A stretch of 64,000 bases of DNA, from the NCBI RefSeq assembly GCF_036588685.1, contig NC_086379.1:12214001-12278000 (forward strand), in the 5' to 3' direction. Shown one piece after another: positions 6,001-64,000 of this stretch (position 1 is its first letter; each line of letters starts with the position of its first letter). Position numbers and translations under genes: made by a program. This stretch comes from Mytilus trossulus (Eukaryota). Below the pieces are notes generated by a model. That model had not been told where the DNA came from. It ran no database searches and was given only the letters and a program-made list of their open reading frames with translations.

Positions 6001-9000
6001 ATTCTCTACTAAAATCCTGGAAATTAATGTTAACCATTACAGTGTCTAAGATATTTTTTGTACAGATAACTCCTTCTTTAACTGCAAACTAGATTGTAAT
6101 ATGATTTTTATAATCTTCTCAATATATTGCAATGATCATCTACTGTTTTGCCTGTGACGAATTGTGTATGTGTATTACCTTCAGAATATAATGTACGTAT
6201 TTTTATCAAGGAGGTATGGAATTGTTATGTGAGGTATGTTCATCTTTTAAATGAAATTTCAAAATAACATCAAGTTCATATATGCATATACTCGTACAGT
6301 CAGTTAGAATCAGACTTGATATATTCTATGATATGTCACTCTTTGATTATATTGCTTTAATTGACATGAAAGACGCGAAAGCACGGTAATTTACCATAAC
6401 TTATAGTGGATAGTATGATGGTTGTACACATGCTCTAACGACAGGAAAGAGACAATTTATTGTTACGTTTTTTCAGATATATATAATTTCTGATGACCAA
6501 ACTGCAGCTATGCTGATTTATGACAACAAAGCGTTCGTGCAGTCTAACCAAGATGAAATTCTGCGGTAAATCTAGTATCAATAATAGCGAATCATTATAT
6601 AATAAAACACAATTGATTATGGACATTGGGAATGTGTCTAAGAGACAACAACCAAAGAGCAGAAACAGCCCATGGCAACCTAGTCTTTATAGCGGCGTGA
6701 ATGTCCCGCACCTGGAAGCGGGCTTCATGTGGTCATAAAACCAAAAAAAGATGTACGAGTGCAGTGCAAATAGTCATCCAAAATGTATAATGGACTTATA
6801 TCAAAAATATATTCAAGACTAACATAATCAACAACGGTCATCATGAATACTTATGCACTTATTATTTATTCTAATACCAAAATTGTAAGCATACAAAATT
6901 TCCACTAATACAAAAGAAGCTTTGATTCATCGCTTAGTAAAACTAGTTTAAAGTAATATTTTTACAGAATACTGTCGCAGATAACAGGATACGAGTTTGT
7001 GGCTGATGGAATCGAATCGTACCAACAAGACGGTATTTCGGATGCTTTCAGGTACTAAGTTTACTAAGAGTATAAACTGAATATCCCATTATAAAAACAA
7101 TATAAAGATAGAACATTTATAATGTTTTTATAGTGATGTAACATGTAACGGATATCTCAGTCTACATGTTTGCCTTATTAACGAAATACAAGGAACTACA
7201 TTGGACATTTTGAAGTCCAGTATTCTTTATTTTGACTTATTGGAATCTCGTTGCTTTTCCTACTATAACGATAACAAAGTTACATAAATAGTTTAAAGCA
7301 CATCAAATCCTTTAATCAGTGATATTTGTACAGAATGCAAAACGTTTGCATAGCGTATTGTTGGTTTTCAGTCATGTTATAATTGAACATATTTTCAGAA
7401 CTTATTTGTATTTCCATGTTATCGTCGAAAACGGAAAAGTGGCATCTGCAACTGAAGCCAAGAGGTAAGATTGTTAATAGTACACTATAAGAAGACCGAT
7501 TACAATAATAGTTTGTTGTCAGTGTGCATGAATCTATAAAATTAATTATCTAAAAACAGGATTTGTTGGAAAGCCAATGCTTATATGTTCAAGTTTTCAC
7601 AAAATATTTAAACAATATCTTAATAACTTGTCTCAGGTGGAAAATCGCGCTGATTCAAACAAAAAATCATATGAAAATGATATTATAAAGATGCTTGAAT
7701 TTTTGATTGATAACATATTTGTTACGTTCAGGGAGACAAATTATCGGCAACCCATAGGAAGTAAATGTGCCCCTCAACATGGCGAGTTGATTAAAAACTC
7801 TTATGAGGTTGGCTTTATAAGAGAACTACTTGAGAAGAAAGAAAAGAAGTTAGCAGTATTTTTTATCTTTACTTTTCGCTATACAGTTGATGATCTCTAA
7901 CCTCACAAAATAATGGTAGATTTTGTGAGTATGTTAAACGCATCTATCCAATCGCACTGGGGATTAAGAGTTCAAAATATACAGTCTGCCTTATATATTG
8001 ACTTACATCTAAACAATTGTCAATAAAGTCGGTTGAAAACAAACCTGTACGACAAAAAAAAATATTTCAGCTTCCAACTATGAACTTTTTATTTCTATGT
8101 AGCAGCGCCTGCATGATTGTCACCAGCCGAAATAGACTTATTATCGGCTTTATTTTAACATGAGTCCTTTCCTCTCTATGTTTTGTGATTGTGTACTATT
8201 GTCTGTCTGTCGTCTGTCTGTCTGTCTGTTTTTTGTTTGTTTTTTCAGCCATGGCTACGTAATTTGATTTTCTATTTATGAGTTTCGTATGGTTTCCCAT
8301 CCTTATATATATTAACTAATTGCTTGTAAAATTATTGATGTAACTAAGTGCATGGCTTACATATTTTATTTTGTTTTAAAAGCATTTTCGACAAACATGC
8401 AGTGGCACTTGCAAGCATGGCTGCAAAGTACAAGATTTCATCTGTTCAGGTAATTGCTATAAATGGTTGTTGAATTTACTGTCTGATGTTTATCATTTGA
8501 GTTATCGAGGATAAAAGAACCACTGGATCGATGCTACTGCTGGTGGAGTTTAAATTCTTCGACGGTATCAACAGCCCAGTAGTCAGCACCTCTGTGCTGA
8601 CATGAATTATCATTTATATGCTCTAATTTATAAATAAACTGTTTTCAAAAATTTTTGAAATACTAATGCCTTTTCTACCTTAGGAATATATTACTTTAGC
8701 TGTATTTGGCAAAACGTTTACGAATGTCGGTCCTCAATGCTCTTCAACTTCATACTTCATTTGGCCCCTTTAACTTTTTTGGTTTCGCGCGACACTGATG
8801 AGTTTTTTACGGACGAAACGTGCGTCTGGCGTAAATACAAAATTTAATCCTGCTATCTATGATGAGTTTTTTCACGCAATCAGAACGTTTTTACGTAAAA
8901 CATTATACACAGAATTACCAAAATATTAAATATAACGGAATATGGAATCTGTGCCGTTATAGTGTTGTGTTAATAGCACAATTATTACTTCATCTTATGC

Positions 9001-16448: not shown

Positions 16449-16782
16449 TATACAAGTAATATTCAGTTAGCTTTTAATTTACTGATAACAAAATCAATAT
16501 TTATACCAATAAAAAACATTATTCAATTATCATATTACAGTGTTGAATAGATAACCTTTTGGAATAAGTTTATTTAAAGGAGCCACAAGTTTACGTGGAT
16601 CATTTCTAAATCTCCGGGCACGGTTAACAACATTTCCGTAAAAATGAAGATGTGCTAGTGTATCTTTCTATGTTACCAGGAGTAGATTACCTTAGCCGTA
16701 TTTGGCACAACCTTTTGGAATTTTGGGTCCTCAATGCTCTTCAACTTTGTATTTTTTTGGCTTTTTAACTATTTTTAACTGA

Positions 16783-16826
16783 GCGTCACTGATGAGTCTT
16801 ATGTAGACGAAACGCGCGTCTGGCTT
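16783..16826 (+). ncRNA. Minimal type I hammerhead ribozyme with intact catalytic core (inside retrozyme-like repeat 16660-16840)
   Basis: GCGTCA-CTGATGA-GTCT TATGT AGAC-GAAA-CGCGCG-TC^TGGC. Predicted cleavage after C16820. Confidence 0.85.
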
Positions 16827-20110: not shown

Positions 20111-20544
20111 ATTTTTTATAATCAATTAGTATTCTACATATTTTTACATGACATGTCTAAACTGACTGAAAGTTTAACCCCGCCGCAGTTTTGCGCCTGT
20201 TCCCAAGTTATTAGCCTCTGGGTTTGTTAGGCTTGTATGTTTGTTTATATTTTAGTTCATTTATATGCTTTTGAGTTTGACGTCAATTTTCACTGAACTA
20301 GTAAACATTTTTATTTGAATGTTCGGCTGGGTGTGAAATTTTCTCGTATAAGAAAGTGTCATTGGCGCAAACTAGAAAAGTAGTGTAGATCATTGGGAAA
20401 CTTACTCGATATCATCCTAGATATTTTCGTCTCGAATATTTTTCACATAGAATTATTTTGTCATTTCATTCTATTACTTGTATCGTAATTAATATGAAGT
20501 CCGTTATTGATATAAATATATTTTATCATTCAGCTTTTTAATCC

Positions 20545-29500: not shown

Positions 29501-32500
29501 TTTGACACTTGGGATTATATACTTTACAAACACTTTAATTTCACTACGTGTTTTTTTTATTACGACTGCATTTTTTTTCACTCACGTTTGTGCAGTCAAA
29601 AGATTTGCAGTTAAAAATGCAAGCATTAATGTCTTACCAGTATTTAAAACTTAGATATATATAGATTTTTATCAACTAATATGAATTTGCGGGATATAGT
29701 TCGGCTAAACCTATATTTAGCTTTTTTTGTCATTCTGGAGGATTTTCTGTGAATAATCTATTTCGTTTAAAGAAACGAAATAAATCTCATTTATTACAAA
29801 TAATGCAATTATGAAATAATAAATGAAATAAGTATGGCGTTCATTATCACTGAACTAGTATACATTTGTTTAGGGGCCAGCTGAAGGACGCCTCCGGGTG
29901 CGGGAATTTCTCGCTACATTGAAGACCTGTAGGTGACCCTCTGCTGTTGTTTTTTTTTTTATTTGATCGGGTTGTTGTCTCTTTAACACATTCCCCATTT
30001 CCATTCTCAATTTTAATTTTCTATTTTGTGATTTTTAACAATGTAAGACAGTTGAAATTCATATTTTAAAACTGAGCCTGTGAAGCTTAATTTTGCTTTA
30101 CTGGAACAATTTTTGATACTTCGCTGTTAATGACATAATTCTGTGTAACAGATGTTTACAATGATTTCAGTACATGTACAAGTTCTCTAATGCATATTTT
30201 TTCCTTCACAAGAACAAATTTATTAAATCCTGAAGAAAGTATGACGTATTTGTTTGCCTGCTTTCAGAACATGTAATTTGAATGATGATGCACTTGGTGG
30301 TATGCGTGACACGATGGCAATCTTTTTTGTTTGAAGTCTGTTATAATGTAGCTTGCTCAAATCGTCTTGATTAGACTTATACATACGTATTTTTGGTTTC
30401 GGACACTTTAGAGTTTTCTTTCAGCACCGATCTACATGTCAATATGAATTTTGTTAAACTTGTGATAGACACGCTATCTATATATTGATGATTTCGAAAG
30501 CGTTAAAAGAGAGTTTTCTTAGATACACAGATAGATGATGAGCTATGTAACTTGTAAGCGCATGAACTGTTGGTAAAGGTACATATATTTGATAAAAGAA
30601 ACTATACATGCACGAAATCAAACTCTTTCAGTCAGTTTAATTGAAGTCTGGAGCTGACATGTCAGTTAACTACTAGTAGTCTGTTGTTATTTATGTATTA
30701 TTGTCATTTTGTTTATTTTCTTTGGTTACATCTTCTGACATCAGATTCGGACTTCTCTTGAACTGAATTTTAATGTGCGTATTGTTATGCTTTTACTTTT
30801 CTACATTCGTTAGAGGTATAGGGGGAGGGTTGAGATCTCACAAACATGTTCAACCCCGCCGCATTTTTGCGCCTGTCCCAAGTCAGGAGCCTCTAGCCTT
30901 TGTTAGTCTTGTATTATTTAAATTTTAGTTTCTTGTGTACAATTTGGAAATTAGTATGGCGTTCATTATCACTGAACTAGTATTTATTTGTTTAGGGGCC
31001 AGCTGAAGGACGCCTCCGGGTGCGGGAATTTCTCGCTACATTGAAGACCTGTTGGTGACCTTCTGCTGTTGTTGTCTCTTTGACACATTCCCCATTTCCA
31101 TTCTCAATTTTACAATAAACATGGTGCATCGCCGACCATAATTCACACTGGTTAAAGACCTCGTAAACAGCACACAATTGTTCCATGTCTACACTACAAC
31201 GAAGTGTCAGATCATCGTCGACCCTCTGACATTACTCCTCTTAAATTGTTAATTCGTATTTAGAATAAGAAGCCTGATAATATCATATTATAAGCCCGGT
31301 ACCTTTGATAAGTATGATTAAAAGGACACTATGATCTATGTATACCAGAGACTAAATGCTTTGAGGTAAACAACTATAGCTTATCGTATGGCTAAAACAA
31401 GAAGCAATTGCCAACACCGTACATAAGCTATAAAGGTTATAAAACAATTTTAATTAGATACTCAAAAGCTTGATTCGTGCTCAAAACTACAAACAAAAGC
31501 AAAAATCATAAAAAGCAACTAACGACAACCATAATGAATAACAAATCAATTTGAAAGATATTAGGCATATGATCGCTTGCCTACGTTAGACACGTGTTTC
31601 GTCGACATAAGACTCATCGGTGACGCTCGAACCAAGTAAAACTTCGTAGAATATTTAAAAACATGTAATCCTATTTAAAATACAGCATAAGTAACATATA
31701 CCCCCTGAGGTAGAACATTTATTGCATTTCAAATATCTACGAAAAATTCAAAATGATCAACTAAATGAATTGATATCCCCATACATTAAAGTATTTATAG
31801 CATGTCAACATACAGGTTCTTGACGTGGCCCTAGCACATACGCTATGCTTCCTCTAAAATACTGACCAAATTTGCACCATCGATAAGTCTACCGTGTGCG
31901 ATAGTTAAAACGGTAGGAAATTTAAAAGGTGGACATATATCTCACGTTCAAGTTCATGGTAAAAATATCAGATTTGACACATTTTTGCGTACTTTTATTT
32001 GCAAAAGTAAAATGTGCGTTGATCCAATTGAGAAAGAAGTATTTTTCAATAGTTATTCGTAATTTCTTTTTTGTAAGTGCAAATTGACTAAGAACAGTAA
32101 GATATTGGTTTTCTACTAAGAAAAAAACGTTGACATTTCAGCTTCTGTGAGCCTTTTAATTTATTTTTTTTTATACTTTGCGTAATAGTAGTACCAAAAT
32201 TGCCTTCGTGGTTATTCATATTCTTTTATTCGAAGCGTTCCATAAACTTTAGGGAAAGAAAGCGATTTCGGAAATTTGATTGAAAAGGGGGAGTGTGTAA
32301 AAAATGCATAAAATTCAGAATAATACAGTGATAATGATATGTTTTAAACAAGTCATGAACTCTTGAATAATACGAACATCATTAATTTTGGTTTCAAGCC
32401 GAAAATATCTACAAAATGAAAAAAAAATATGAAAATTGGCACCATTTTTATAAAAAAAAATCCAAAATTGTTACAAAAATCTTTTTTTTTCTCAAAGATT

Positions 32501-35328: not shown

Positions 35329-37614
35329 TCTTTTGTTTAAAATAATTGGAAGAATAAACAAATGATTCTGCTTTCCAATTTGATTTTTTATGAACGAATG
35401 TCATGAATGTTATGATTTATCATTATGTTGCTATAAAAAATTAATGAGTACGAAAATGATGTAGATCATAATCAACAGCTATTTACTAAGAATTTTCTGG
35501 TATAACACACAATTTCTAATGAAGTTCTTACTTTTAAATATGCATTTGTGTTACATTGAAATAACATTTATAGCACTGTAAGAAGAGCCAAAAGAGTAAT
35601 TTGCATTTTTTTTAACCTATTATGGATACATAAGAATGAATAAGAAACGTTAACTCGTACATGTCATATGATAATAACATTGAGGTAGGAATGAGGTTTG
35701 TGTCTGAGAGCCAACAAACCGGCCATATGACAGAAAACAGCTGAACGCCATCATTGGGTCTTGAACACAGCTAGAAAATCACACATCTGAAGGTGGGCTT
35801 CAGCTGGCCCCTTAAAACCATTTACTAGGTAAGTGAAATTGGGCATCAATCTAAACTCCACAACATATAAATGAACTATAAGACTAATAAAGGTCAAGGC
35901 TCCTGACTTGGGACACCAGTACTGACTGTTATCGACTGGTTAATTCGTAAAACACTAGTTATTTATTCGGTCTACGACAATGTACAGAACGAACTTTCTA
36001 TATATAGTTCTAAACTTGATGCCCCTTTCTGTCTCATTTGAACAACATCTTTAATGAAATACTACTATACATTGTACTCTTATCTCATTTGTTCCATATT
36101 TTAGACACAGTTTCTAATTTGGTTTCTATCTTAACATGTATGGGTCACTTTAAACATGGTTTAAACTATCGAAATTTGTTTAATGAGATAATTTGAATTT
36201 TCTTATAACAAAACTATGTTTAAATAATGATATTAGGATCCTAGCATCTGTATTGTAAATCAGCGAAAAATATCAAAAGCACTTACAAACTATAAAGACG
36301 TCGCCGTGGCTTAACATTATAAAAGACCAACAGACAACAGCAGTACACAAAACACAACATAGAAACTTAACACTGCAACTGTAATCCCACAAACAAACTG
36401 GTGATCTCAGGTGCTCCTGCAGGGTAAAGGTTCCTATGCCGCATACTATATTCAGTATTATATGAGGAAACGAGCCCAAATTCTAAATAAGTACCAAAAT
36501 GTACCTCTTTTTTTTATCTTCTTTAAGATTATCTTTGCTCAAGCATGTCAAGGGTTGAATATACGACGCCATTTTTTTTTATAAGTTTACAGTATAATTG
36601 AGTCAATAAATAAACTATTTACCATCACGCGACAATACAAAAAAATAACAATAAGGCATAGTGCATTCTTTAAGTGTATAAAAATCACCTCAGTCAATTG
36701 TCCTCAGAATATAATATACTAATACATCATTGGTGAATCGAACAAAATTTTTAAAAAAATGTATGATATACAAACTTGCACATGGTTTATTCAAGATAAA
36801 AATTTAAGAAATGATAGCTGTAATGAAAAGTAATGTAATACAAAAACTAAGCAAGCAATGATTTGGTTTTTTTTCATATTTCATCACGGGTATTTAATTA
36901 TTTTTTTTCCTCCCCGAAACATACATTTGTACTTGTGAACTTTGTTCAAGAATGTTTTAGGTAGTGTTTTATATGCTCAAATACTTTTCTAAAACCTTGA
37001 CGAATACAACCGCATGCGCAGTCGAGTGTGTCAGTTCTGCAGTACCAATAGGAAAACAAAATGTCAGACAGTACTACATGTGAACATTTCTATTTATTGT
37101 CCAATGACGTGTCCTTATAACATGTGAAACTTGTTAACTTCTTATCTACCTTTGGTGACCTTTAAAGGACACATATGAAAACAATTTCGTGACCAAAGAC
37201 AGACCAACGACAGACCAGGTATATTTATTTGATTGTTTAACCTAAAATTTTCCTCAATCATGTTTATATAAAAAAAATGTTCTCTATTTATGTTTATTTT
37301 CTGTAAAACTTGCAGTACCAATTATGTTTTATTGTCGTAACTTTAAATCAAGTAAATTGCGTTTTGGTTTACTTTTATTTCAAGGCACTGTTTTGTTCTC
37401 TCTAGTAGAAATATCCTGGGTTTATACTTTTCTGCAGAAAAATAATAAGATTGTAGATACAGAAATAGTTTAAATTTAATTAGCAAGATACGAAACTACC
37501 TTCTAAATGTTCTCCGTTACATAAACGAAGACGTACTGATCAAAATCATTTGATTAATAAACTTTAGCAGCTATTAATTGTACAGTACTGCTTTTAGATA
37601 GAAACCTGGAGGAA

Positions 37615-43954: not shown

Positions 43955-46900
43955 CTAATTCTTTTCCGACACTTCAGTCCCATTACGCCCCCATTCTCTG
44001 TTTCTGAGTTCAACTCTTCTAATTTTACCACTGACCGTCTTTGGCAACTGGTCCACAAATTCAATCTATAAAACATGTTTTTTTTCGTTTTTAACAGTGT
44101 GTTATATTGTAGGTACATTAATAGACATCAAGAAGTAGGGAACAAAACGGAATTACTAAAATGAGTAGCAAATTATTTATACACGATGTAAAATCGTAAC
44201 AAAAAAGGAACGAATAATCAATTTAAAAACTAATACAATATCATATAAGATAGAGTATTGGTACATATAATGGTTATCAAAGGTGACAGGCTTATAATCT
44301 GATACGCCAGACGTCCGTAATACCCTGTCGAAAACGAGAGAACATTGTCTTTCATTTGTTTGCTAAATGTTTGAAAAAGGTTAATAATTTCGAAAGAAAC
44401 GCTCATTGTTATAATTTCAAAATAAATTGATTAAATAAAAGTTTTTCACAATTATTCTTTGCCAAGCACTTAATGTCTTTATACATAGAAACACGCGAGT
44501 TTTCTATTAGACAAATATAGTTAAAAATAAAATATGCTATGTCTTCGATAAAATTGATTTCATTGTCTAGTACGACGTTATAATTACAGGTTTTGTCTTT
44601 AAAGTCGTCGGATTCAACTGAACTTAAGCAATGATTAATAATGTTTAAATAATGATGTACTGTTAAGCTGATTTATTGGTGCAATCGTTAATATGTACTT
44701 GTATAGTTCTTAAAGGTCTTGATCACAATATGCCTTAGTCTATTATATTTAGTTTTTTAAACAAACATGATATTCCAAAACAGTTTCAAAATCTATTATG
44801 TACTCTCACAGATTTTAACTGATTAAGTGTGCTTACTTGGTTTATAAAAACGATTAAAATTGGATAATCGAATAGCGACGGATTTGTCATTTCAACGAGT
44901 GTGTCTTTGATAGAATGTGATCAATCTTGTGTCATGCGATCTCCTCGGTTTGTGTGTAACATTCATGTGTGTCTTCCTACTCAGCGTCTGAAACTACATC
45001 GATTTTGTGTGTTGCATTTGTGTTACTTGATTTGTCTGTTCTAACGTAGTGTCTGCGATTCCCTCGATTTTGTGTGTTACTTGATTTGTCTGTTCTTACG
45101 TAGTGTCTGCGATTCCCTTGATTTTGTGTGTAACTTGATTTGTTTGTTCTTACGTAGTGTCTGCGATTCCCTCGATTTTGTGTGTAACTTGATTTGTTTG
45201 TTCTTACGTAGTGTCTTCGATTCCCTCGATTTTGTGTGTAACTTGATTTGTTTGTTCTTACGTAGTCTCTGCGATTCCCTCGATTTTGTGTGTTACTTGA
45301 TTTGTCTTTTCTTACGTAGTGTCTTCGATTCCCTTGATTTTGTGTGTAACTTGATTTGTTTGTTCTTACGTAGTGTCTGCGATTCCCTCGATTTTGTGTG
45401 TAACTTGATTTGTTTGTTCTTACGTAGTGTCTGCGATTCCCTCGATTTTGTGTGTAACTTGATTTGTTTGTTCTTACGTAGTGTCTGCGATTCCCTCGAT
45501 TTTGTGTGTAACTTGATTTGTATGTTCTTACGTAGTGTCTGCGATTCCCTCGATTTTGTGTGTTACTTGATTTGTCTTTTCTTACGTAGTGTCTTCGATT
45601 CCCTTGATTTTGTATGTAACTTGATTTGTCTGTTCTTACGTAGTGTCTGCGATTCCCTCGATTTTGTGTGTAACTTGATTTGTTTGTTCTTACGTAGTGT
45701 CTGCGATTCCCTCGATTTTGTGTGTAACTTGATCCGTCTGCTCTTACGTAGTGTCTGCGATTCCCTCGATTTTGTGTGTTACTTGATTTGTCTTTTCTTA
45801 CGTAGTGTCTTCGATTCCCTTGATTTTGTGTGTAACTTGATTTGTTTGTTCTTACGTAGTGTCTGCGATTCCCTCGACTTTGTGTGTAACTTGATTTGTT
45901 TGTTCTTACGTAGTGTCTGCGATTCCCTCGATTTTGTGTGTAACTTGATTTGTTTGTTCTTACGTAGTGTCTGCGATTCTCTCGATTTTGTGTGTTACTT
46001 GATCCGTCTGCTCTTACGTAGTGTCTGCGATTCCCTCGACTTTGTGTGTAACTTGATTTGTTTGTTCTTACGTTGTGTCTGCGATTCCATCGATTTTGTG
46101 TGTAACTTGATTTGTTTGTTCTTACGTAGTGTCTGCGATTCCCTCGATTTTGTGTGTAACTTGATTTGTTTGTTCTTACGTAGTGTCTGCGATTTCCTCG
46201 ATTTTAACGTGTTACATTGATGTGTCTCTTCCTAAGCATGGTCTGCGATTCCCTTACATTTAATTTGTAGTTTACTTTGATGTGTCTCTACCTGGGCAGC
46301 GTCTCGTCTTGCTCTTTTAAGCTGGGATCTAATTATAATGGGCATGTAATCTATTGCTTGGTTGTCTTTTATCACAAGCCCAGTAATCAGCACTTTTTGT
46401 GCTAACATGAATTATAATTGATATGGTTTTATTTATAACTTTACAAATTTTTGAATTTTTTGAAATGCTAAGGCTTTTCTACGTCCGGCATAGATTACCT
46501 TAGCTGTATATGGCAAAACTTTTAGGAATTTTGGTTCTCAATGCTCTTCAACTTCGTACTTTATTTGGCCTTTTTAACTCTTTTGGATTCGGGCGTCACT
46601 GATGAGTCCTTTGTGGACGAAACGCGCGTCTCGTGTATATACTAAGTTTAGTCCTGGTATATATGATGAGTTTATTTAGTCATTTTAATCACCATATTAT
46701 ATAAATACTTTTTTTTCTATTTAACTTATTTGATTTCTAGCATGAACGTAAAGTTCAGTTGTAAGTTTTACCTTTCTTGGATATTTATAAGGAGCTGTGA
46801 CAGATTTTACATGGTTCTGTAGTTCTAGTCTTAACTTTTCTTTGTCGTGTTTGGAATATTGCTCTGTTAGAATTACAAATGCTTTTACTACCTACAATAT

Positions 46901-49900
46901 ATCACAAGAGAATTTGTGTGTTTAAAAAGTTATTAAAGTAAGTGAAAAATGTCATAATAAAACCTTTAAGCATCACATGTTCATGATGTTGTCATAATTG
47001 TGAAATTGTAAAATGTACATTAGACAACATCCGATATCGATTAATATACGATACATTATAATAGAAGAAATCTATTTTTTGTTTAACTGTCAGTAGACAA
47101 AACAAGTTCAATGTTTCAAAGCATCAGTTTGCAAAATAATTTACATTATTTTTAACAACATAAAAACGTAGGATTTATTTATGTGTCTTCAACATATGCG
47201 GGATTTTCTCGCTACATTGGAGACCTGTTGAACATTATTTGTTGGTGACCATCTGCTGTTGTTTTTTCTATGGTCGGGTTGTTGTCTCTTTGACACATTC
47301 CCCATTCCCATTTCCAATTTTATTTCTTGAAATTAGAATTTTATATACCTCTCCTCTTACATCATCCGGGCTGCTTACTACTGCCGATTCCAGAACTGCT
47401 GGATGTTCAATCAATGCACTCTCAACTTCAAAAGGACCTATTCGATAACTAAAGACAACATGTTTTTTTTTAAAACTGCAATATATACTTGTACTAATTA
47501 AAATCTTAAGTTCATTTGTATAGACCGACCATACGGTTTCTTTGTGTTTTTTTGTCTCATTGTTGAAACCCGTACAGTTGCCGTATTTGCTTACATCCAC
47601 TTGATTTGAACTTAAGGGACTAGTTCCTGACGTTATCTCATTGGCTAATATACCACTCCTCTTTATTGTTATATCAAAACAGATTCATTGCTATATCAGT
47701 TGATTCAAATAACTTTTACGATTAATAGAGTGACCAACTTGGCTCAAGCATTTTAAATAAAATAATCCTCATATCCCCTATAAAAAGACATTATTTTTAC
47801 TTGATTCATACATACCCAGAGGACAACATGACATCATCATCACGTCCAATAAACCAAATGTAGTCATCTTCATCCATTTTCCCACGGTCACCAGTTAAGT
47901 AAAAGTCACCTTTAAAGACAGCTTTATTTCTGTTATCATCATCCTGCAACAATTTAAGGCAAATTGTTTGTAATTCAGTTTGTTACCATTGGCATATAAA
48001 TGTATGTCCTTTACATAAGTGTACATGAATGATCCATATACAAAACCGTTTTACAAAAATATGGAGCGTCAAGGTAAGTTCGGTTAAACGGAAGTTCATA
48101 AAACCTGACGTAACAAAACGTTAGACTATATCAACCAACGAACAGATAGAAAAACTAGTCATGTACACATTTGCATAAACAACTGACTGAAAACGTTCTC
48201 AAAATTAGATACATTAGACAGCTGATATCTTGCTTTTTCTGAAAAATAAGTAACACCAATTTTTTTTTTAAAGTTACTCTCTAAAAAGATTGAATAGATT
48301 AAAATACAACCTAAAATGCAAAAATAAAATATTCTTTTGTGATGTCACCATGTTGTTGCAAATGGTCAGATAAACTCCCCATGAAGCAGCAGCTTACCTA
48401 ATTATAAATTACATTAGATTAACAAAAATACGAAAAACAAGATCCATATGTAGCAGCATTAGATAAGATTATACTTTACGTTCTGTTTTACCTAAAAGGA
48501 CATGGTAGAAGGGGTTTTGCATGGATTATGCATGGAAAATTAAATTTTGTGTGATTAAATAAGAATAGAATATCGAAATAATTGAGAGATAAGAAAAAGA
48601 TTAAATGGGGTCATCTTTTTTTTTAGCTGAATAAAAAAACTAAGAAATTCTATTATTTGAGTTATCTAGCTCTCCTACTATCTGATTATTCTCAACTTAT
48701 GGGGAAAATTTCTTACACATAAGTTACATACTACTCTCAAAATTTGTACATTTCATGAAAGATCTAGACCAAGTGTTATCGTTTATTTCAAAATCCAAGA
48801 TAGCGGAAAACACACCAGATAATTAAAGTCGATTTTAACCTAATTTATACTTATTTTTAACACTAATAAAAAAAAAACTGTCACCATAAAGATGCTCAAC
48901 TTCATATTATGTCGAAATCAATATCTAAATTTGTGCACTTTAGATCCTGGTATTATAGTTTAAGGGATATTGGAAATTTACTTTGGGGGATTGCAATTTG
49001 ATAATACAGACTCTTTATCGTTTCAATTTGATGTATAAAACAAAAAATAGTATGTAACATAGATATAGAAACAATAAAACGTTAATAACACAAAAAATAA
49101 AATTTCTCAGTCATACAATATTATTGTACATTTATATTTTAATAAGTGCCAATTATTCTACTTATCATTAATACAACATGGTATTATTACTTACGACGTA
49201 ATGGGAAAACAATCCCATTGGTCGAACAGGCTTTACTCTTACACCAATCACACCTTCTATGTTTCGAGGTAACACATTGCCATCATTGTCGACTATCTAC
49301 AAGAACATTATTTCAAATGATCGAATGCTAGTACATTGTACTTAATGACTGTATTAAATCGTCACCATTGTATCAAATGTGAATGTCTACCATATTCGCA
49401 AAGAATCAACCAACAACTATTTCATGTGTTGCTGTTTTTTCTTGTACGTCATAGGTGTTTTTTTGGGGGGGTTTTTTGGTTCTTTTTTTTAATAGCTTTG
49501 TTTTTTGTTTTCGATCAATTCTGTTGTCCTTCAAATTAGAATGTGAGATGGCTTTACAAATGAAAACAACACATTAGATAATTTCATGCATACGAAGCGC
49601 TTTTTATCGACTTGTTCCCTCTAAATCGAATATTTAAAAACCGAAATAACTTTTTGAAGTTCACAGGAATATTTCATGTTTTTACGCAATTAACCATCGA
49701 TTATGAACTTTGATTGTTTTGGAAAACTTTGTGGTGTAAAGAACACACAATTTGATAAATTCTTAACGTGGAAATACCGAAACTAGAAGTTTTTGTTGCG
49801 TATCGTAGAAGACTGCTGTGTAATGTTCTCATAGGTTTATGAAAGTTTTTCATTTTGTTTGATCATAAATATAAGAAATAAAATTGAGAATGGAAATGGG

Positions 49901-52900
49901 GAATGTGTCAAAGAGACAACAACCCGACCAAAATAAAAAAACACAACAGCAGAAGGTCACCAACAGGTCTTCAATGTAGCGAGAAATTCCCGCACCCGAA
50001 GGCGTTCTTCAGCTGGCGCCTAAACAAATATATACTAGTTCAGTGATAATGAACGCCATACTAATTTCAAATTGTACACAAGAAACTAAAATTTAAATAA
50101 TACAAGACTAACAAAGGCCAGAGGCTCCTGACTTGGGACAGGCGCAAAAATGCGGCGGGGTTAAACATGTTTGTGAGATCTCAACCCTCCCCCTATACCT
50201 CTAACCAGTGTAGAAAAGTAAAAGCATAACAATACGCACATTAAAATTCAGTTCAAGAGAAGTCCGAGTCTGATGTCAGAAGATGTAACCAAAGAAAATA
50301 AACAAAATGACAATAATACATAAATAACAACAGACTACTAGCAGTTAACTGACATGCCAGCTCCAGACTTCAATTAAACTGACTGAAAGATTATGATTTC
50401 ATCATATGAACATCAGGCACAATCCTTCCCGTAAGGGGTTTAGTATCATACCATCATAACATATATGAGAAGAACATAACCCGTGTCATGCCAACAACTG
50501 TTTTTAGAATAAATGTGTTTAGTTCCGACGCAAAGACCTTATCAGTGACTCAATATTAACTCCAAAATATGCAATCTTTAATGACTTGACAACAGTATCG
50601 TAATTATATCCCTTCTTAATAAGTCTATTCAAAGGTTTTGTAAGTTTATGAGGTGAATACTGACACCTTTGTGCTTTATAAAGAATATTTCCATAAAAAA
50701 TTGGATGTGAAATACCTGAACGTATAAAAAGTCTGCATGTTGAGCTATATTTACGAATGATGTCTTTATACCGATGATAAAATTTAGTAAATGTTTTGAC
50801 TAGTTTGTGATATCGAAAACCCTGGTGTAATAATTTTTCAGTAATACATAAATTTCTCTCGTTAAAATCTAAAACATTGTTACATACACGAGCGAATCGT
50901 ACAAGTTGAGATATATAAACACCGTAAGATGGTGACAAGGGAACGTCACCATCTAAAAACGGATAATTAACGATAGGAAATGAAAAATCATCCCTTTTAT
51001 CATAAATTTTAGTATTCAGCTTTCCGTTAGTGATATAGATATCAAAATCGAGGAAAGGGCAGTGGTCATTGTTAGTATTAGCTTTATTTAAAGTGAGTTC
51101 ACCAGGATAAATTTCATTAATATACATACTGAAGTCGTCATTATTGAGAGCCAAAATATCATCCAAATATCTAAAAGTATTATTAAATTTGTTTATCAGA
51201 TGTTGTTTTGACGGGTCTTTGCTTATTTTTGTCATAAATTGTAACTCGTAACAATACAAAAAGAGGTCCGCAATAAGTGGTGCACAGTTAGTCCCCATTG
51301 GAATTCCGATAATCTGACGATATACGGAATCCCCAAAGCGAACAAAAATGTTATCTAGTAAAAATTCAAGGGCATATAAAGTATCAAAGCATGTCCAATT
51401 AACATAGTTTTTTTGTTTATTGCTACTAAAAAATGACCTAAAAGAGTTTGAACATATATATTCACATTCTGATTTTTTGAATGCCCATTTAATTAGGTGT
51501 GTGAATTTTTTCTTAATGAGAATGTGAGGCAATGTGGTATACAGGGTAGAAAAATCAAAACTTTGAACAGATTCAAAATCACCAATATAAGCATGCAATT
51601 TATCAAGTACTTCCAACGAGTTCTTGACACTCCAAAAGTAATTTATTCCACTATTTTCGAAGGCCTTATTTGAACAATTTATTATAAGGTTTTTAATTGT
51701 ACCAAGTGTGCTGGTAAGAATAATAGACAATTTAGTAGTTGAACAATGGCTTGAAGACGAAATAAATCTATATTTGTAAGGGGTTTTGTGTAGCTTCGGA
51801 AGCCAATACATAGTTGGAACTTTCATTGTATTTGGCTCTGCTTGTAAAGCGGTGGCTAAAAGTTTATGTTTGTTACAGATTTCGTTTTCTGAAAATGGAG
51901 TCAGTTGGAATGTTGGTGAATTGGTGATTTCCTTTTTCAGAACCTCGATGTAAAATTTACGTCAAACAATAATAATATTATTAGCAGCTTTATCGGCCGG
52001 GACAAAAACAAATTCCTTGGCTAGTTCTTTTAGTTTATGTTTGATACGAGAAATAGGTTTATTGTGGTTATTGTTAATAGTAAAATGTTCTTTAAAATGT
52101 TGAATACGTATATCAACTATCTTCATTACTGAATTAAAAAAAGAGTCCAAAGATTTTTTGTCAGCTTTTTCCCGTTTTATCCATTTCATACAGTAAGTAT
52201 GAAGTGAGTCGTGGATGATATTACGACACTCATTCCAATTAATAATTGACGGGGGACGATATTTAGGTCCTTTACTGAGAAATGATTTTAACTCTCGGTC
52301 TTGAACGATGTTAAGATCTCCTGTTATAACATGGGAAATGGGTCCATAAATATATTCGGAATTACTGCAATTACATGAAGTAGGTGTATTTTCACTGATA
52401 TTAACATCTTTACACAATTGACTATAATTAAACACAAATTTCCGGGTAGATTTCTTATAAATATAACAAATAAGAGGTAGCTCAGTATTGTCAAAATATC
52501 CAGGAATTTGTTCTTTAACAGAATGGTCGTTAAATATACCGGCAATATTTACAAAATCAAAGCCTTTATTGACATACTTAATTTTAATAAAATGTTTTTT
52601 ATGATCTTCAGGGCGATCAATTTTGGGAAATAATTTAGAATAACAATATGCCATAATAATTTGAACAATTTCATACTTAGGACTGCTATATGAAATTGTG
52701 TTGCAATCCTCCAAAATTTTATTTAACTTATTAACCGGTAACGAACAGAGTTTTGTTAACAGATAATGTCTGCCGTTGTTTTTTGAAATAGAAATTAGGT
52801 CCGAAATATTGGTATGATTGGCCCGAAATTTTCTTTGATTGCGATTTGTTCTACAACCGTGAGAACGGTTTTTACGAACAGTTTTAGAAACAATATCCAA

Positions 52901-55900
52901 AATGTTAACGGAATTGGTTCTAGATATATTACCAATTCCCATGATATTATCATTTAGACCGAGAGGGTAAACTGTCTGTAATTTTTTAATCCAATTTAAT
53001 TCAATTATTTTCCGTGATCGTACAAACTTTGAATGCGATTCACCAGGCTGCTTATTTACTACTTCTAAAGGTTGAACTGCTAAATATTTAAAAGGATGGT
53101 TGTGCTTCTTAAGGTGTTGGTAAATGATACTTTTGAATTTATTAGGTCTTTTAAAACGATACAGATGTTCTTGAGTGCGTTTTGATAAATATCTTCCAGT
53201 TTCTCCTACGTACTGAATACCACATCCCGGTTTGTTTCATGTGAGTAAATAAATAATACTGTTTGTTTTTCAAGTAATATCAGTTTCAAAATTTAAAGAA
53301 AATGTGCGACCATTAAACGTGGACCTTACCGTATTGTTGGTGGAAAGACGGGGACATGTAAGTCATTTTTTGGCATGACACTTATCGATAGAAGGGTAAC
53401 CACGATTTTTATTGTTAAAAATGTTAGCGATGGTAGTATTTTTAGATAACCGATTTTGAAAATTGAGACGTGTAGATACCCTTTGAACAAGTTTAGTATT
53501 TAGTATTTTTCCGTTTCTTAGTTTCATAATTGTTTTGTTGGTGAATTACATAATAAAGGAGCAAAGATTGGCGTCCAGAATATGAACCAGCATACAATAA
53601 TTAAGTTAAGTAAAAGTGATAAATTTGTTCGGCTGAAAATGTCGAACGCTATCAGCATTAATTACTAGTACCCGAAAAAGATAGTGTATATCAGGGTATG
53701 AAAGATAGTGTATATCAGGGTATGACTGATGGCTGACCAATTAGTAGAATGGGGCTGAATATTGAAATACTACTTTTTGATAAACATTCCTAAAGTAATG
53801 AACTAGAGCAGTTCTCGCCCGGACACACACTCCATAATCTAGTATATTATAAGAGCATAAACCTGAAGCACGGGGAGGCACTCTACTGCCTCCAAACGGC
53901 ACTAAAGACAAACTCTGTAAAAAATAAAATTGAGAATGGAAATGGGGAATGTGTCAAAGAGACAACAACCCGACCAAAATAAAAAAACACAACAGCAGAA
54001 GGTCACCAACAGGTCTTCAATGTAGCGAGAAATTCCCGCACCCGAAGGCGTTCTTCAGCTGGCCCCTAAACAAATATATACTAGTTCAGTGATAATGAAC
54101 GCCATACTAATTTCCAAATTGTACACAAGAAACTAAAATTTAAATAATACAAGACTAACAAAGGCCAGAGGCTCCTGACTTGGGACAGGCGCAAAAATGC
54201 GGCGGGGTTAAACATGTTTGTGAGATCTCAACCCTCCCCCTATACCTCTAACCAGTGTAGAAAAGTAAAAGCATAACAATACGCACATTAAAATTCAGTT
54301 CAAGAGAAGTCCGAGTCTGATGTCAGAAGATGTAACCAAAGAAAATGTCTTCTAAATATTTGATGTATCAAAAAGAGTACGCTTATTTATAATAACTTCG
54401 TAAAGTTAAGATACTCAGGACATTCTTGGATTATCTCCGTTTTATTTTAGATTACCGTATCTGGTTATTAATGCGGCTAGATTGTTTTCTCTTTTATCTA
54501 TACCTTCATTTATTTTATCACTATTGCTTATATTACGACTGACCTCTAGATCAATTCCAGGCGCTGCTTTCCCCATAGAACCTGGTCTTATTTCAACACA
54601 TGGATATGTCCCACATAAAAACGTCTGAAAGAAAAAAAAACAATTTAGACCAATAAAATTAAACCTAAAACAATCTTTTGGAAGTATAGGACGAACTGTA
54701 TATGAGTGTCTCATTGTCTTTACATTGTAAAACCTTTATGATGTTGATTCTAAATAAAACTTGCTGATTATATCAACACAATATCAATAACCATATACGA
54801 TGTTTGGAGTGAAAACTATGAAACATGTGTTTTGCGAAATATATTCTAGAGCTTAATAATACCTTAGCACAAAGTAATGAAAATGAATTCAAACTGTTGC
54901 AAATCTCTCATCAATGATTATTTTGGCTTTTCAATTTATTTAAATGTTTTTTGGATCGTCCTATTTTCTTCAAAAGCCAAAAAAATAATCATTTTCTCCT
55001 ATGTTCTATTTTAGCCATAGTAGCTATGTTTCTTGACATACAAGGAAATAAAATATAAAATTTATACTAAATACTCTGAAACTCATTTAGCCTAAGTTTG
55101 GCTGAAATTGATACAGCAGTTTCAAAGGAGAAGATTTTTTAAAGTAAGTCAACATGATGAACAAATTGCGAAAAAAGTCTATAAAGGGCAATAACTCCTT
55201 AAGGGGTCAATTGACAATTTTGGTCAAATTGACTTAATTGAAGATCTTACTTTGCTGAACATCATTGCTGTTTACAGTTTATTTCTATCTATAATAATTA
55301 TATTCAAGATTATAAACAAAAACAGCAAAATTTCCTTAAAATTATCAATTCAGGGGCAGCAACCCAACAACAGGTTGTCTGATTCATCTGAAAATTTCAG
55401 GGCAGATACATTGTAGATCTTGACCTGATAAACAATATAACCCCAGGTCAGATTTGCTCTAAATGCTTTGGTTTTTGAGTTATAAGCCAAAAACTGCATT
55501 TGACCCCTATGTTCTATTTTTAGCAATGGCGACCATGTTTGTTGATAGATCATAACTTCGGATACAATTTACAAACTAGATACCCTAAGGAACATTCAGT
55601 TAAAGTTTGGAAGTATTTGGCCCAGTAGTTTCAGAGGAGAAGAATTTTGTAAAAGATTTTCAAGATTTACGAAAAATGGTTAAAAATTGACTATAAAGGG
55701 CAAACACTCCTAAAGGGGTCAACTGACCATTTCCGTCATTTGACTTATTTGTAAATCTTACTTTGCTGAACATTATTGCTGTTTCCAGTTTATCTCTATC
55801 TATAATAATTTTCAAGATAATAACCAAAAACAGCAAAATTTCCTTAAAATTATCAATTCAGGGGCAGCAACCCAACAACAGGTTGTCTGATTCATCTGAA

Positions 55901-62213: not shown

Positions 62214-64000
62214 AAAATTGGGACTTGGAATGTACGAACACTGTATCAAAGTGGAAAGAACTTTCAGACAGCCAAAGAAATGGACAGATACAGTATTGAA
62301 ATTTTAGGACTTAGTGAAGTAAGATGGAATACATCTGGCATGACAACGTTAAACACTGGTCATACCATCATCCACTCTGGTAACAAAAACGCCACTGACA
62401 CTCATGACAAAGATGTTGGATTTATGCTTACTAAAAAGGCAAAGCAGTCTCTCTTAGAATGGAATCCTGTGTCTTCTAGAATAATCACTGCCAGGTTTGA
62501 CACAAAATTTCAGAAAACAACCATAATCCAGGTTTACTCACCAACAAATAATGCAGATGAAGAAGAGAAAGATGACTTTTACAACTCTCTGCAGAACACT
62601 GTAAATTCTGTGCCTAAACGAGACATCCTCATGCTACTAGGAGACCTCAATGCAAAAGTGGGTAAGGACAGGACAGGGAGAGAAAGAGAAATGGGACCAA
62701 ATGGAATCGGTGAAATGAACGAGAACGGTGAAATCTTTGCTGATTTTTGTGCTGTAAACAGTCTAGTAATAGGTGGTACACTCTTCCCCCATAAAAACTG
62801 CCACAAAGTTACTTGGGTTTCGCCGAATGGAGTGACAGAAAATCAGATAGACCATATTGCTATATCCCAAAGATGGAGGTCATCTCTACAAGATGTACGA
62901 AACAAGAGAGAAGCAGATATAGCATCAGATCAACACCTAATCATTGCAATGATACAACTAAAACTACTTTCAACAAAAAAAGCAAAATCCAGGTGGCAGA
63001 AATTTAATGTTGATCTTTTCAAAGACCCTAAAGTTGTTCAAGACTACCACATTCTGCTGCAAAACAAATTTGGTGTACTTGAAAATCTACATGATGACGA
63101 AACTAGCATCAACACAGCATGGGAAATGACCAGAGATTCTATTGTTCAAGCATGTGAAGAAACTGTCGGCTATCTTTAACAAAACCGCAAGCAATGGATG
63201 TCAGAAAATACCTGGAAAATTGTCAAAGAAAGAAGACAAGTGAAAGAAAAGTTCTAACTGCTATAACTAGACAGCAGAAAAAGCAGACACAAGAACAGTA
63301 CAGCAATAAAGATAAAGAGGTGAAGAAAAGTTGCAAACAAGATAAACGGAACTTTGTAGAACAACTAGCCAAAGAAGCAGAAGCCGCCTGTAGCAAGGGA
63401 GACACCAAAACCCTATACAACATTACAAAGCAATTAAGCGGTAAACCACAAACTTCAGATACACCTATCAAAGATAAAAACAACAATACCCTCACTAAAC
63501 TGGAAGATCAACTTGAAAGGTGGAAAGAAGATTTCGAGCAGGTTCTCAACAGGCCCCCACCTACAGATCCACCTGAATTACAAAATGGTCCAATAATAAA
63601 CATCAAAACCAGCCAAATAACAAAAACTGAAATCAACAAAGCTATCAAAAGTCTAAAAAATGGAAAAGCAGGCGGCATTGATAACATACCACCAGAAGCT
63701 ATAAAAGTCTTGGATGATACATCTGTCCTTAGCCTGTTACAACTTCTAAATAAGATCTGGGAAGAAGAAGAAATACCAGATGATAGGAGTAAAGGACTTT
63801 TGGTAAAAATCCCTAAGAAAGGTAACAAGTCACTTTGCAAAAACTGGAGAGGTATCATTTTATTGTCCATACCTAGTAAACTGCTCTGCAGCACCATCCT
63901 TAGCAGAATGAAAAATGAAGTGGACAAGATACTTAGAGATGAACAAGCTGGCTTTAGACAAGAAAGATCATGTGTAGACCAAATAGCCACATTGAGAATT
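62214..64000 (+). mobile_element. RTE-clade non-LTR retrotransposon (APE endonuclease plus start of RT), inactivated; runs off the window
   Basis: KIGTWNVRTL, LGLSEVRW, VYSPT, LGDLNAKVG, NQIDHI, SDQHL, then GKAGGIDNIPPE, NWRGIILLS, EQAGFR..RSCVDQI. Nonsense TAA at 63177-63179 and a frameshift near 63250. Confidence 0.9.

What the first reader, a model, noticed from the sequence alone, without database searches (positions are those of the whole stretch)
50402..53527. Selenocysteine-recoded retrotransposon: four in-frame UGA codons at cysteine positions plus its own SECIS
Seen in the sequence: what the ORF track shows as broken pieces is one 1002-codon frame (ATG 53527 to TAA 50519) with no frameshift. 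All four internal stops are TGA, although random nonsense mutations in such AT-rich DNA should often give TAA/TAG. Their contexts are [30 protein letters not shown] and [15 protein letters not shown], where related Penelope-like proteins typically carry Cys. A canonical SECIS follows the stop. Established: Naiad-clade Penelope-like elements have an N-terminal GIY-YIG, and selenoprotein-coding members have been reported, so the class itself is known; standard annotation would nonetheless call this copy a pseudogene. Inference: full-length EN-RT needs four Sec insertions, so mobility would depend on host selenium status and Sec machinery (SBP2, eEFSec, tRNA-Sec).
Basis: partly seen in the sequence, partly recalled or inferred. 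Interest (0 to 1): 0.95.

Follow-up and report, generated by a model that had tools for sequence, protein, structure and literature searches.

The report
Selenocysteine-coding Naiad retrotransposon, intact copy
This is an intact copy of a very young, high-copy Penelope-like (Naiad) retrotransposon whose endonuclease-reverse transcriptase gene carries four UGA codons at invariant cysteine positions and its own SECIS, a kind of mobile element first described in 2021, here in a new family with a new combination of selenocysteine sites.

Summary
On the minus strand, ATG 53527 to TAA 50519 is one 1002-codon frame. Its only internal stops are four TGA codons (55, 86, 97, 522).

- **Cysteine columns:** all four TGAs align with cysteine in every one of 49 full-length homologues that has a residue there.
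- **Copies:** 30 of 30 near-identical genomic copies keep all four TGAs.
- **Divergent relatives:** a second family in the same genome (62% aa identity) and about ten families on marine metagenome contigs carry TGA or TGY at these same columns. Non-synonymous change stays low after every TGA (pN 0.21-0.35, pS 0.71-0.89).
- **SECIS:** a SECIS lies 52 nt after the stop (50467-50403). Across seven related sequences from five or six families it keeps the AUGA/AAA/GA core, and 12 of its 18 pairs show compensatory changes.
- **Host:** the genome has tRNA-Sec genes.

The class is published (Craig et al. 2021, PMC8557442, clams and spiders). This family differs from the four published ones in which sites are Sec: the published clam pattern plus the second Cys of the CX2-5CxxC finger.

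The scan had already noted this element on other windows of this genome.

The parts
49872..54346 (-). Whole insertion: a 5'-truncated partial copy (pseudo-LTR) followed by one full unit of about 4046 bp
   Evidence: The shared boundaries of 30 genomic copies against the window mark the ends. Tandem neighbours lie about 4.02 kb apart on several contigs.
53918..54346 (-). Pseudo-LTR: an upstream partial tandem copy of the last 429 bp of the unit
   Evidence: It is 99.3% identical to 50299-49872. This arrangement is typical of Penelope-like elements (PMC8557442).
53528..53917 (-). 5' untranslated region (contains a 24-bp x2 repeat at 53677-53725)
   Evidence: It lies between the unit start and the ATG shared with family B.
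50519..53527 (-). Single ORF of 1002 codons plus TAA, encoding GIY-YIG endonuclease, linker and reverse transcriptase
   Evidence: Homologues hit Pfam GIY-YIG (34/36) and RVT_1 (25/36). A homologue profile hits I-TevI and a group II intron RT in the PDB.
53363..53365 (-). UGA codon 55, the second Cys of the CX2-5CxxC zinc finger (C50-x4-U55-x2-C58)
   Evidence: Cys in 35/35 homologues. TGA, TGT or TGC in 16 of 17 related loci, TCG in the other.
53270..53272 (-). UGA codon 86, the conserved Cys just before the GIY motif
   Evidence: Cys in 41/41 homologues. TGA in 14 of 19 related loci, TGY in 4.
53237..53239 (-). UGA codon 97, the first Cys of the CCHH finger (U97-x4-C102)
   Evidence: Cys in 42/42 homologues. 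TGA in 17 of 18 related loci.
52928..53380 (-). Zinc-finger plus GIY-YIG endonuclease region (about aa 50-200)
   Evidence: Alignment to homologues whose matching part hits Pfam PF01541 and the I-TevI catalytic domain.
52367..52375 (-). CxC motif of the linker (C385-N-C387); here codon 385 is TGT
   Evidence: Family B and 16 of 27 related loci have TGA at the first Cys.
51986..51994 (-). DKA motif (D512-K-A514)
   Evidence: it is invariant in alignment A1.
51962..51964 (-). UGA codon 522, the Cys eight residues after DKA
   Evidence: Cys in 49/49 homologues. TGA in 22 of 23 related loci.
50522..51961 (-). Reverse-transcriptase part after the last UGA (YLDD at 51169-51158)
   Evidence: 39% identical over 388 aa to the RT part of P0009, E 6e-89. 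Against family B, pN is 0.21 and pS 0.82.
50403..50467 (-). SECIS element (form 2): helix I, AUGA/GA core, 10-bp helix II, unpaired AAA, 3-bp apical mini-helix
   Evidence: Rfam SECIS_1 at 32.8 bits. The consensus fold and covariation show 92% of cells paired and 12/18 pairs with compensatory change. My own model R1 scores it 72.6 bits, but the window SECIS is one of R1's training rows, so that score is expected by construction. It is essentially invariant in 46 copies.
49872..50518 (-). 3' untranslated region; the last 429 bp are the part repeated as the pseudo-LTR

Best explanation
The stretch is a structurally intact copy of a recently amplified Naiad-clade Penelope-like retrotransposon. 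It sits on the minus strand at 54346-49872. Its single mRNA encodes an N-terminal zinc-finger/GIY-YIG endonuclease joined to a reverse transcriptase. Four metal-ligand-type cysteines are encoded by UGA: the second Cys of CX2-5CxxC, the Cys before GIY, the first Cys of CCHH, and the Cys eight residues after DKA. The form-2 SECIS in the 3' UTR is expected to recruit the host's SBP2/eEFSec/Sec-tRNA machinery, so that ribosomes insert selenocysteine at each UGA and make the full 1002-residue protein. Shown here: the frame, the Cys/UGA correspondence, inheritance of the four UGAs by the whole family, their conservation under purifying selection across divergent families, a covarying SECIS, and tRNA-Sec genes in the host. 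Inferred: that the UGAs are decoded as Sec, and that production of the enzyme, and hence mobility, is limited by selenium supply and Sec-decoding capacity.
For: (1) The frame and its four TGAs are as described.
(2) All four TGAs align with invariant Cys in 49 full-length homologues.
(3) 30 of 30 copies at 99.5-100% identity keep all four TGAs and the TAA, and 25 of 30 have no other stop or indel. In one search nearly all of 100 copies show the same 424-aa stretch bounded by stops at codons 97 and 522.
(4) Substitutions private to one copy look neutral (30 synonymous, 74 non-synonymous). Substitutions shared between copies are enriched for synonymous change (12 of 20, against about 24% expected).
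(5) Family B in the same genome is 62% aa and 67% nt identical. It has TGA at all four homologous codons plus a fifth where A has TGT. Non-synonymous change is far lower than synonymous change in every segment, including after the last TGA (pN 0.21-0.35, pS 0.71-0.89).
(6) In 30 metagenome loci of the same clade, recurrent in-frame TGAs fall on five Cys columns, with TGT or TGC as almost the only alternative. Every other TGA is a singleton apart from one shared by two loci. Only 20-31% of aligned codons are identical overall.
(7) SECIS: Rfam hits appear on the coding strand just after the stop in 10 of 16 loci. In the alignment, 12 of 18 pairs have compensatory changes and 92% of cells pair, against 34-47% when the partners are slid. 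My model then finds it in 7 more loci above threshold, all on the coding strand, and nowhere else in the 64 kb window. With filters off there are also weak candidates in L061 (family B) and L050.
(8) The host has two tRNA-Sec genes at 79.6 and 77 bits, cut-off 47.
(9) The class is published (PMC8557442).
Against: There is no direct evidence of transcription, translation or Sec incorporation. The window's SECIS scores 32.8 bits, just under Rfam's cut-off of 35. Four UGAs served by one SECIS implies low yield unless decoding is processive. The 30 copies are so alike that their shared TGAs alone prove only inheritance from one source. The case for selection rests on the comparisons between families. 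Family B's SECIS was seen only as a weak candidate (14.6 bits).
Confidence: 0.88

Rival explanations
1. The UGAs are read through without selenium. Either near-cognate tRNAs (Cys, Trp, Arg) decode them, or the Sec machinery inserts Cys, so the protein carries ordinary residues and selenium plays no specific role.
For: The alternative codon at every site is TGY (Cys), so Cys is functionally acceptable. One locus even has Cys at the most conserved Sec site (L071). No biochemical data exist.
Against: A SECIS with compensatory changes is kept directly after the ORF in nearly all families that have enough 3' sequence. That would be pointless for SECIS-independent readthrough. UGA has been kept for long periods although a single mutation would give Cys.
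Confidence: 0.06
2. The family is non-autonomous or dead. The TGAs are true stops inherited from a defective source copy that a Cys-coding relative mobilised in trans.
For: The 30 copies differ by less than 0.5%, so their shared TGAs could reflect a single origin. No expression data are available.
Against: The frame stays open apart from the TGAs in 25 of 30 copies. Changes shared between copies are biased towards synonymous. Families at 45-62% aa identity keep the same TGAs with pN far below pS in all segments. The sequences with a stop at this site form one deep clade (SH-aLRT 99-100). Stops do not persist like this in trans-mobilised junk.
Confidence: 0.03
3. Termination at the UGAs is the main outcome and is itself functional. 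Short N-terminal products form, or the RT is made by re-initiation, and full-length Sec protein is a rare by-product.
For: Sec decoding is generally inefficient, and four sites multiply the loss. Internal ATGs exist, for example the 435-aa and 326-aa ATG-started ORFs.
Against: The endonuclease and RT must act together in target-primed reverse transcription, as they do in single-ORF homologues. The UGAs sit exactly on Cys columns rather than at domain borders.
Confidence: 0.03

Closest known systems
Selenoprotein-coding Naiad Penelope-like elements: Naiad_Scon, Naiad_Mmer (clams) and Naiad_Sdum, Naiad_Smim (spiders), Craig et al. 2021, PMC8557442
   Same: N-terminal GIY-YIG plus RT in one ORF. 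Three to four in-frame UGAs at conserved Cys, always including the Cys before GIY and the Cys eight residues after DKA. In clams, also the first Cys of CCHH. A SECIS just after the stop. Pseudo-LTR and tandem structure. No canonical hammerhead.
   Different: By the paper's text, neither clam family has Sec in the CX2-5CxxC finger. Naiad_Scon's fourth UGA lies in RT6(D). Here the fourth UGA is the second Cys of that finger, a site reported only for the spider family Naiad_Sdum.
Cys-coding Naiad elements (for example database proteins P0009, P0011, P0012)
   Same: Same domain order and motifs at 30-37% identity over the whole protein.
   Different: They have Cys at all four sites and C-x2-C rather than x4 spacing in the CCHH finger.
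Selenoprotein P
   Same: A eukaryotic mRNA with several UGA-Sec codons that needs processive recoding.
   Different: SelP is a host selenium-transport protein, usually with two SECIS elements. Here a transposon enzyme has one detectable SECIS, and the Sec residues are at putative metal-ligand positions.

Membership tests
Naiad clade of Penelope-like elements | GIY-YIG endonuclease N-terminal to the reverse transcriptase in a single ORF | tested here: met
   Alignment to full-length homologues. Those homologues hit Pfam GIY-YIG at about residues 96-151 and RVT_1 at about 653-809. A profile of them hits I-TevI and a group II intron RT. The RT part matches at E 6e-89. The window's own pieces gave no Pfam hit on their own.
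Naiad clade of Penelope-like elements | CX2-5CxxC and CCHH zinc-finger-like motifs in the endonuclease (these separate Naiad from Chlamys) | tested here: met
   C50-x4-U55-x2-C58 and U97-x4-C102 are followed by conserved His, with UGA in place of Cys.
Naiad clade of Penelope-like elements | Linker with a CxC motif and a GxKF/Y motif; DKA motif before the RT core | tested here: met
   C385-N-C387, the G-P-K-Y stretch and D512-K-A514 are present and aligned.
Naiad clade of Penelope-like elements | Pseudo-LTR or partial tandem insertion structure | tested here: met
   A 429-bp terminal direct repeat. Tandem copies lie about 4.02 kb apart elsewhere.
Naiad clade of Penelope-like elements | No canonical hammerhead ribozyme | tested here: met
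   The permissive Rfam scan found no hammerhead inside 49872-54346.
Naiad clade of Penelope-like elements | Insertion-in-fingers domain in the RT; bias for microsatellite targets | not tested
   I did not examine the IFD. The flanks of this copy show no obvious microsatellite, and I made no survey of other copies.
Eukaryotic selenoprotein gene | In-frame UGA aligned with Cys (or Sec) in homologues | tested here: met
Eukaryotic selenoprotein gene | SECIS element in the 3' UTR on the coding strand | tested here: met
   Rfam SECIS_1 at 32.8 bits, slightly under the cut-off of 35. It has the AUGA core, the AAA and the GA. Covariation across seven related sequences supports the fold. SECISearch3 was not available.
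Eukaryotic selenoprotein gene | Coding constraint continues downstream of the UGA | tested here: met
   After codon 522, pN is 0.21 and pS 0.82 against family B.
Eukaryotic selenoprotein gene | Host Sec-decoding machinery present | tested here: met
   Two tRNA-Sec genes at 79.6 and 77 bits. SBP2, eEFSec, PSTK and SepSecS were not searched.
Eukaryotic selenoprotein gene | Sec demonstrably incorporated | not testable with these tools
   This needs 75Se labelling, mass spectrometry or ribosome profiling.
Published families Naiad_Scon / Naiad_Mmer specifically | Same set of Sec positions | tested here: not met
   The paper's text gives three sites for Mmer, and for Scon the same three plus one in RT6(D), with none in the CX2-5CxxC finger. 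Here codon 55 in that finger is UGA and there is none in the RT core.

The most novel reading that the evidence does not exclude
Once the lineage carried a SECIS, single-base TGY/TGA flips at five metal-ligand cysteines became freely available, and the number of Sec residues has gone up and down repeatedly. I saw one to five Sec per family. Sec at codon 55 appears in two separate subclades, one family has Cys restored at the DKA+8 site, and the first Cys of CxC is a Sec site the 2021 paper does not report. Under this reading Sec at zinc-finger ligands is selected. It could, for example, make the endonuclease-RT redox- or selenium-sensitive, so that transposition of a family making up a visible part of the genome is tied to the host's selenium economy.
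Probability: 0.3. Interest if true: 0.8.

Novelty: new member of a known kind. Interest (0 to 1): 0.5.

Why it matters
Selenoprotein-coding transposons are known from a single 2021 paper describing four families. This family gives that class a far stronger comparative footing:
- it is present as many near-identical copies (at least 100 scored; several thousand first-look candidates), most of them intact;
- a five-Sec sister family sits in the same genome;
- a dozen related families on metagenome contigs carry one to five Sec at the same five columns;
- the SECIS shows clear compensatory changes.

Three consequences follow. Standard annotation splits these ORFs at the UGAs: the public protein sets hold the pieces between UGAs as separate proteins. 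Such elements also scatter thousands of ready-made SECIS elements through a genome, a possible source of new host selenoproteins. And the family would be a natural system for studying processive multi-UGA decoding and Sec in zinc-finger ligands.

Tried and rejected
I therefore did not use read laying, and there is no expression evidence.
Family B's 3' UTR could not be read from this genome and was read only from metagenome contig L061.

**Searches that gave little or nothing**
- The first metagenome scan, with P0003 alone, found nothing. The second, with an alignment, worked.
- Pfam on the window's own pieces gave no significant domain. Domain identity rests on the homologues.
- Rfam found no SECIS in the eight family B loci, because they end 48 nt after the stop.
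- A genome-wide SECIS_1 search scored too few candidates to be informative.
- The paper's supplementary sequences are not held.
- No host name could be obtained.

**Readings considered and rejected**
- An alternative nuclear code was rejected. Copies end in TAA or TAG, recurrent TGAs occur only at Cys columns, and the window holds no suppressor-like tRNA.
- The bacterial promoter scan does not apply to this genome.

In one search I used a column majority of the 30 copies, in memory only, to decide which base at each site was the change. It was not printed, saved or reused.
Full report
**Observation.** On the minus strand, ATG 53527 to TAA 50519 is a single 1002-codon frame with exactly four internal stops, all TGA. 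They are codons 55, 86, 97 and 522, at 53365-53363, 53272-53270, 53239-53237 and 51964-51962. The sequence is 69% A+T, so an open frame of this length is far beyond chance. Rfam's SECIS_1 model matches 50467-50403 on the same strand, 52 nt after the TAA. The score is 32.8 bits against a curated cut-off of 35, E 9e-4. It is the only SECIS match in the whole window. The MFE fold and the cmscan alignment, together with the consensus fold, show helix I, the AUGA/GA core, a 10-bp helix II, an unpaired AAA and a small apical helix. That is a form-2 SECIS.

**Anatomy of the insertion.** I compared the window with 30 other genomic copies. The insertion spans 54346-49872. A 429-bp partial upstream copy (54346-53918) is 99.3% identical to the element's own 3' end (50299-49872). 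After it comes a full unit of about 4046 bp:
- 5' UTR: 53917-53528
- ORF: 53527-50519
- 3' UTR: 50518-49872

This pseudo-LTR layout, and the tandem copies spaced about 4.02 kb apart elsewhere in the genome, are typical of Penelope-like elements. No hammerhead ribozyme lies inside the element.

**What the protein is.** The window's own pieces give no Pfam hit. A phmmer search of piece 98-521 against 1.84 billion representative proteins found 2756 relatives.
- Thirty-six full-length relatives were scanned one by one. Pfam GIY-YIG matched near the N-terminus in 34 and RVT_1 in the C-terminal half in 25.
- A profile built from them hits the I-TevI catalytic domain and a group II intron reverse transcriptase in the PDB.
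- The piece after the last UGA is 39% identical to the RT part of P0009, E 6e-89.
- The CX2-5CxxC and CCHH fingers, the CxC and GxKY motifs, the DKA motif and YLDD are all present.

These features are the definition of the Naiad clade in Craig et al. 2021 (PMC8557442).

**Are the TGAs at cysteine positions?** Yes. I aligned 49 full-length homologues with the frame, writing X at each TGA. The four columns hold Cys in 35/35, 41/41, 42/42 and 49/49 of the sequences that have a residue there.

**Are they private damage or a property of the family?**
- A DNA search of the host assembly (1.30 Gb) gave 4266 first-look candidates. All 40 that were scored are 99-100% identical.
- In the 30 copies I fetched, all four TGAs and the TAA are present in every copy. 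Twenty-five of the 30 have no other stop or indel.
- Substitutions private to one copy look neutral: 30 synonymous and 74 non-synonymous, against 21-27% synonymous expected.
- Substitutions shared by several copies are enriched for synonymous change, 12 of 20.
- Private nonsense mutations in copies are mostly TAA or TAG.

**Deeper conservation.** A second family in the same genome, family B (L039-L046), is 62% aa and 67% nt identical over the whole ORF.
- Family B has TGA at all four homologous codons.
- It has a fifth TGA at the first Cys of the CxC motif, where the window copy has TGT.
- Synonymous sites between A and B are saturated (pS 0.71-0.89). Non-synonymous change is low in every segment (pN 0.21-0.35), including the 480 codons after the last TGA (pN 0.21).

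A metagenome scan then returned 30 contigs of the same clade. Three of them are family A and two are family B; most of the other long, intact-looking contigs are 40-48% aa identical to the window copy, and the short or decayed ones fall lower.
- Across these contigs, recurrent in-frame TGAs fall on five columns only: 522 (22 of 23 loci), 97 (17 of 18), 86 (14 of 19), 385 (16 of 27) and 55 (7 of 17).
- TGT or TGC is the alternative in all but two cases.
- All other TGAs are singletons, apart from one shared by two loci of one family.
- Overall only 20-31% of aligned codons are identical between these families and A.

On trees, the sequences with a stop at the DKA+8 site form one clade apart from the Cys-only homologues (SH-aLRT 99 and 100). 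Within that clade the number of Sec sites varies from one to five, and it does not follow the tree neatly. Sec at codon 55 appears in the A+B group and again in L055/L056. This suggests repeated flips in both directions.

**SECIS conservation.**
- Rfam finds a SECIS on the coding strand, abutting or just after the terminal stop, in 10 of 16 metagenome loci that have 3' sequence.
- Seven distinct sequences align with an invariant ATGA, AAA and GA.
- RNAalifold predicts the canonical three-helix structure.
- For that structure, 92% of cells pair, against 34-47% when the partners are slid by one to three columns. Twelve of 18 pairs show changes on both sides, a value no shuffle out of 500 reached.
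- A covariance model built from these seven sequences finds the element in seven further loci, always on the coding strand downstream of the ORF, and only once in the 64 kb window.
- With filters off, family B shows a weak candidate 132 nt after its stop. It has an AUGA, a fully pairable 10-bp helix II, an AAA and a GA (the pairing is my reading of that alignment).

**Host side.** The genome has two strong tRNA-Sec matches (79.6 and 77 bits, cut-off 47). The window holds no tRNA.

**Comparison with what is known.** Craig et al. 2021 described four selenoprotein-coding Naiad families, two from clams and two from spiders, with three or four UGAs and grade-A SECIS elements. My library searches found no later paper on them.
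- The present family shares the published clam pattern: the Cys before GIY, the first Cys of CCHH, and DKA+8.
- It adds Sec at the second Cys of the CX2-5CxxC finger, a site reported only for a spider family.
- I therefore file it as a new member of a known kind.

The scan had already noted the same element on other windows of this genome, and two follow-ups reached the same reading.

**Limits.**
- The tools did not name the host.
- Decoding as Sec and dependence on selenium are inferences from the sequence signature.

Noticed in passing
L039-L046 (G000 loci), L061, L062: A sister family B in the same genome, 62% aa identical, carries five in-frame TGAs. The extra one is at the first Cys of the linker's CxC motif, a Sec site the 2021 paper does not list. 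Public protein sets hold its piece between UGAs (residues 104-380) as a separate 277-aa protein.
   Followed up: partly
L047-L076 (marine metagenome contigs): About ten divergent families of the same Sec clade carry one to five TGAs, always at the same five Cys columns. L048 has only the DKA+8 site. L071 has Cys at DKA+8 but TGA at CxC. L055 and L056 have all five. The pattern does not nest on the tree, which suggests repeated Cys/Sec flips.
   Followed up: partly
window 53239-53222; L047-L065: The whole Sec clade has x4 spacing between the first two ligands of the CCHH finger (U/C-x4-C). All 42 Cys-only homologues have C-x2-C. L048, which has Cys there, keeps the x4 spacing, so the two-residue insertion is a trait of the clade and not strictly tied to Sec.
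   Followed up: partly
L049, L051-L054, L056, L068, L069, L073: In most metagenome families the terminal TAG is itself part of the 5' arm of the SECIS, which starts at the stop codon. In family A the SECIS lies 52 nt downstream, and in family B about 132 nt.
   Followed up: partly
P0043, P0098, P0007, P0010 and others (database proteins): Several public predicted proteins have Trp exactly at the Sec columns (86, 97 or 385). This is as expected if a gene caller used a code in which TGA means Trp. Many others end exactly one residue before column 385 or 522.
   Followed up: partly
window 46593-46636 (+), 16783-16826 (+), 5701-5744 (-): Three type I hammerhead ribozyme matches lie just under Rfam's cut-off (27.7-30.3 bits against 34). 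They may belong to canonical Penelope-like elements or retrozymes. Weak RT-like matches lie near two of them, at 7679-8128 and 16533-16658.
   Followed up: no
window 30614-31112, 29824-30020, 47197-47328, 20172-20310, 35673-35915, 6604-6653: These are 5'-truncated tail fragments (69-94% identical) of the 3' end of this or related Naiad families. None of them reaches the SECIS.
   Followed up: no
window 62280-63179 (+): A 299-aa ORF with a weak match to the Exo_endo_phos (APE-type endonuclease) family. It is probably a LINE fragment.
   Followed up: no
G000:C10:63843916-63855579 and 64461689-64492367: Two long tandem arrays with a period of about 890-900 bp give identical sub-threshold tRNA-Sec matches (45.9 bits). 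They are probably arrays of a long-variable-arm tRNA gene rather than tRNA-Sec.
   Followed up: no
window 53677-53725: A perfect 24-bp x2 tandem repeat sits in the element's 5' UTR.
   Followed up: no
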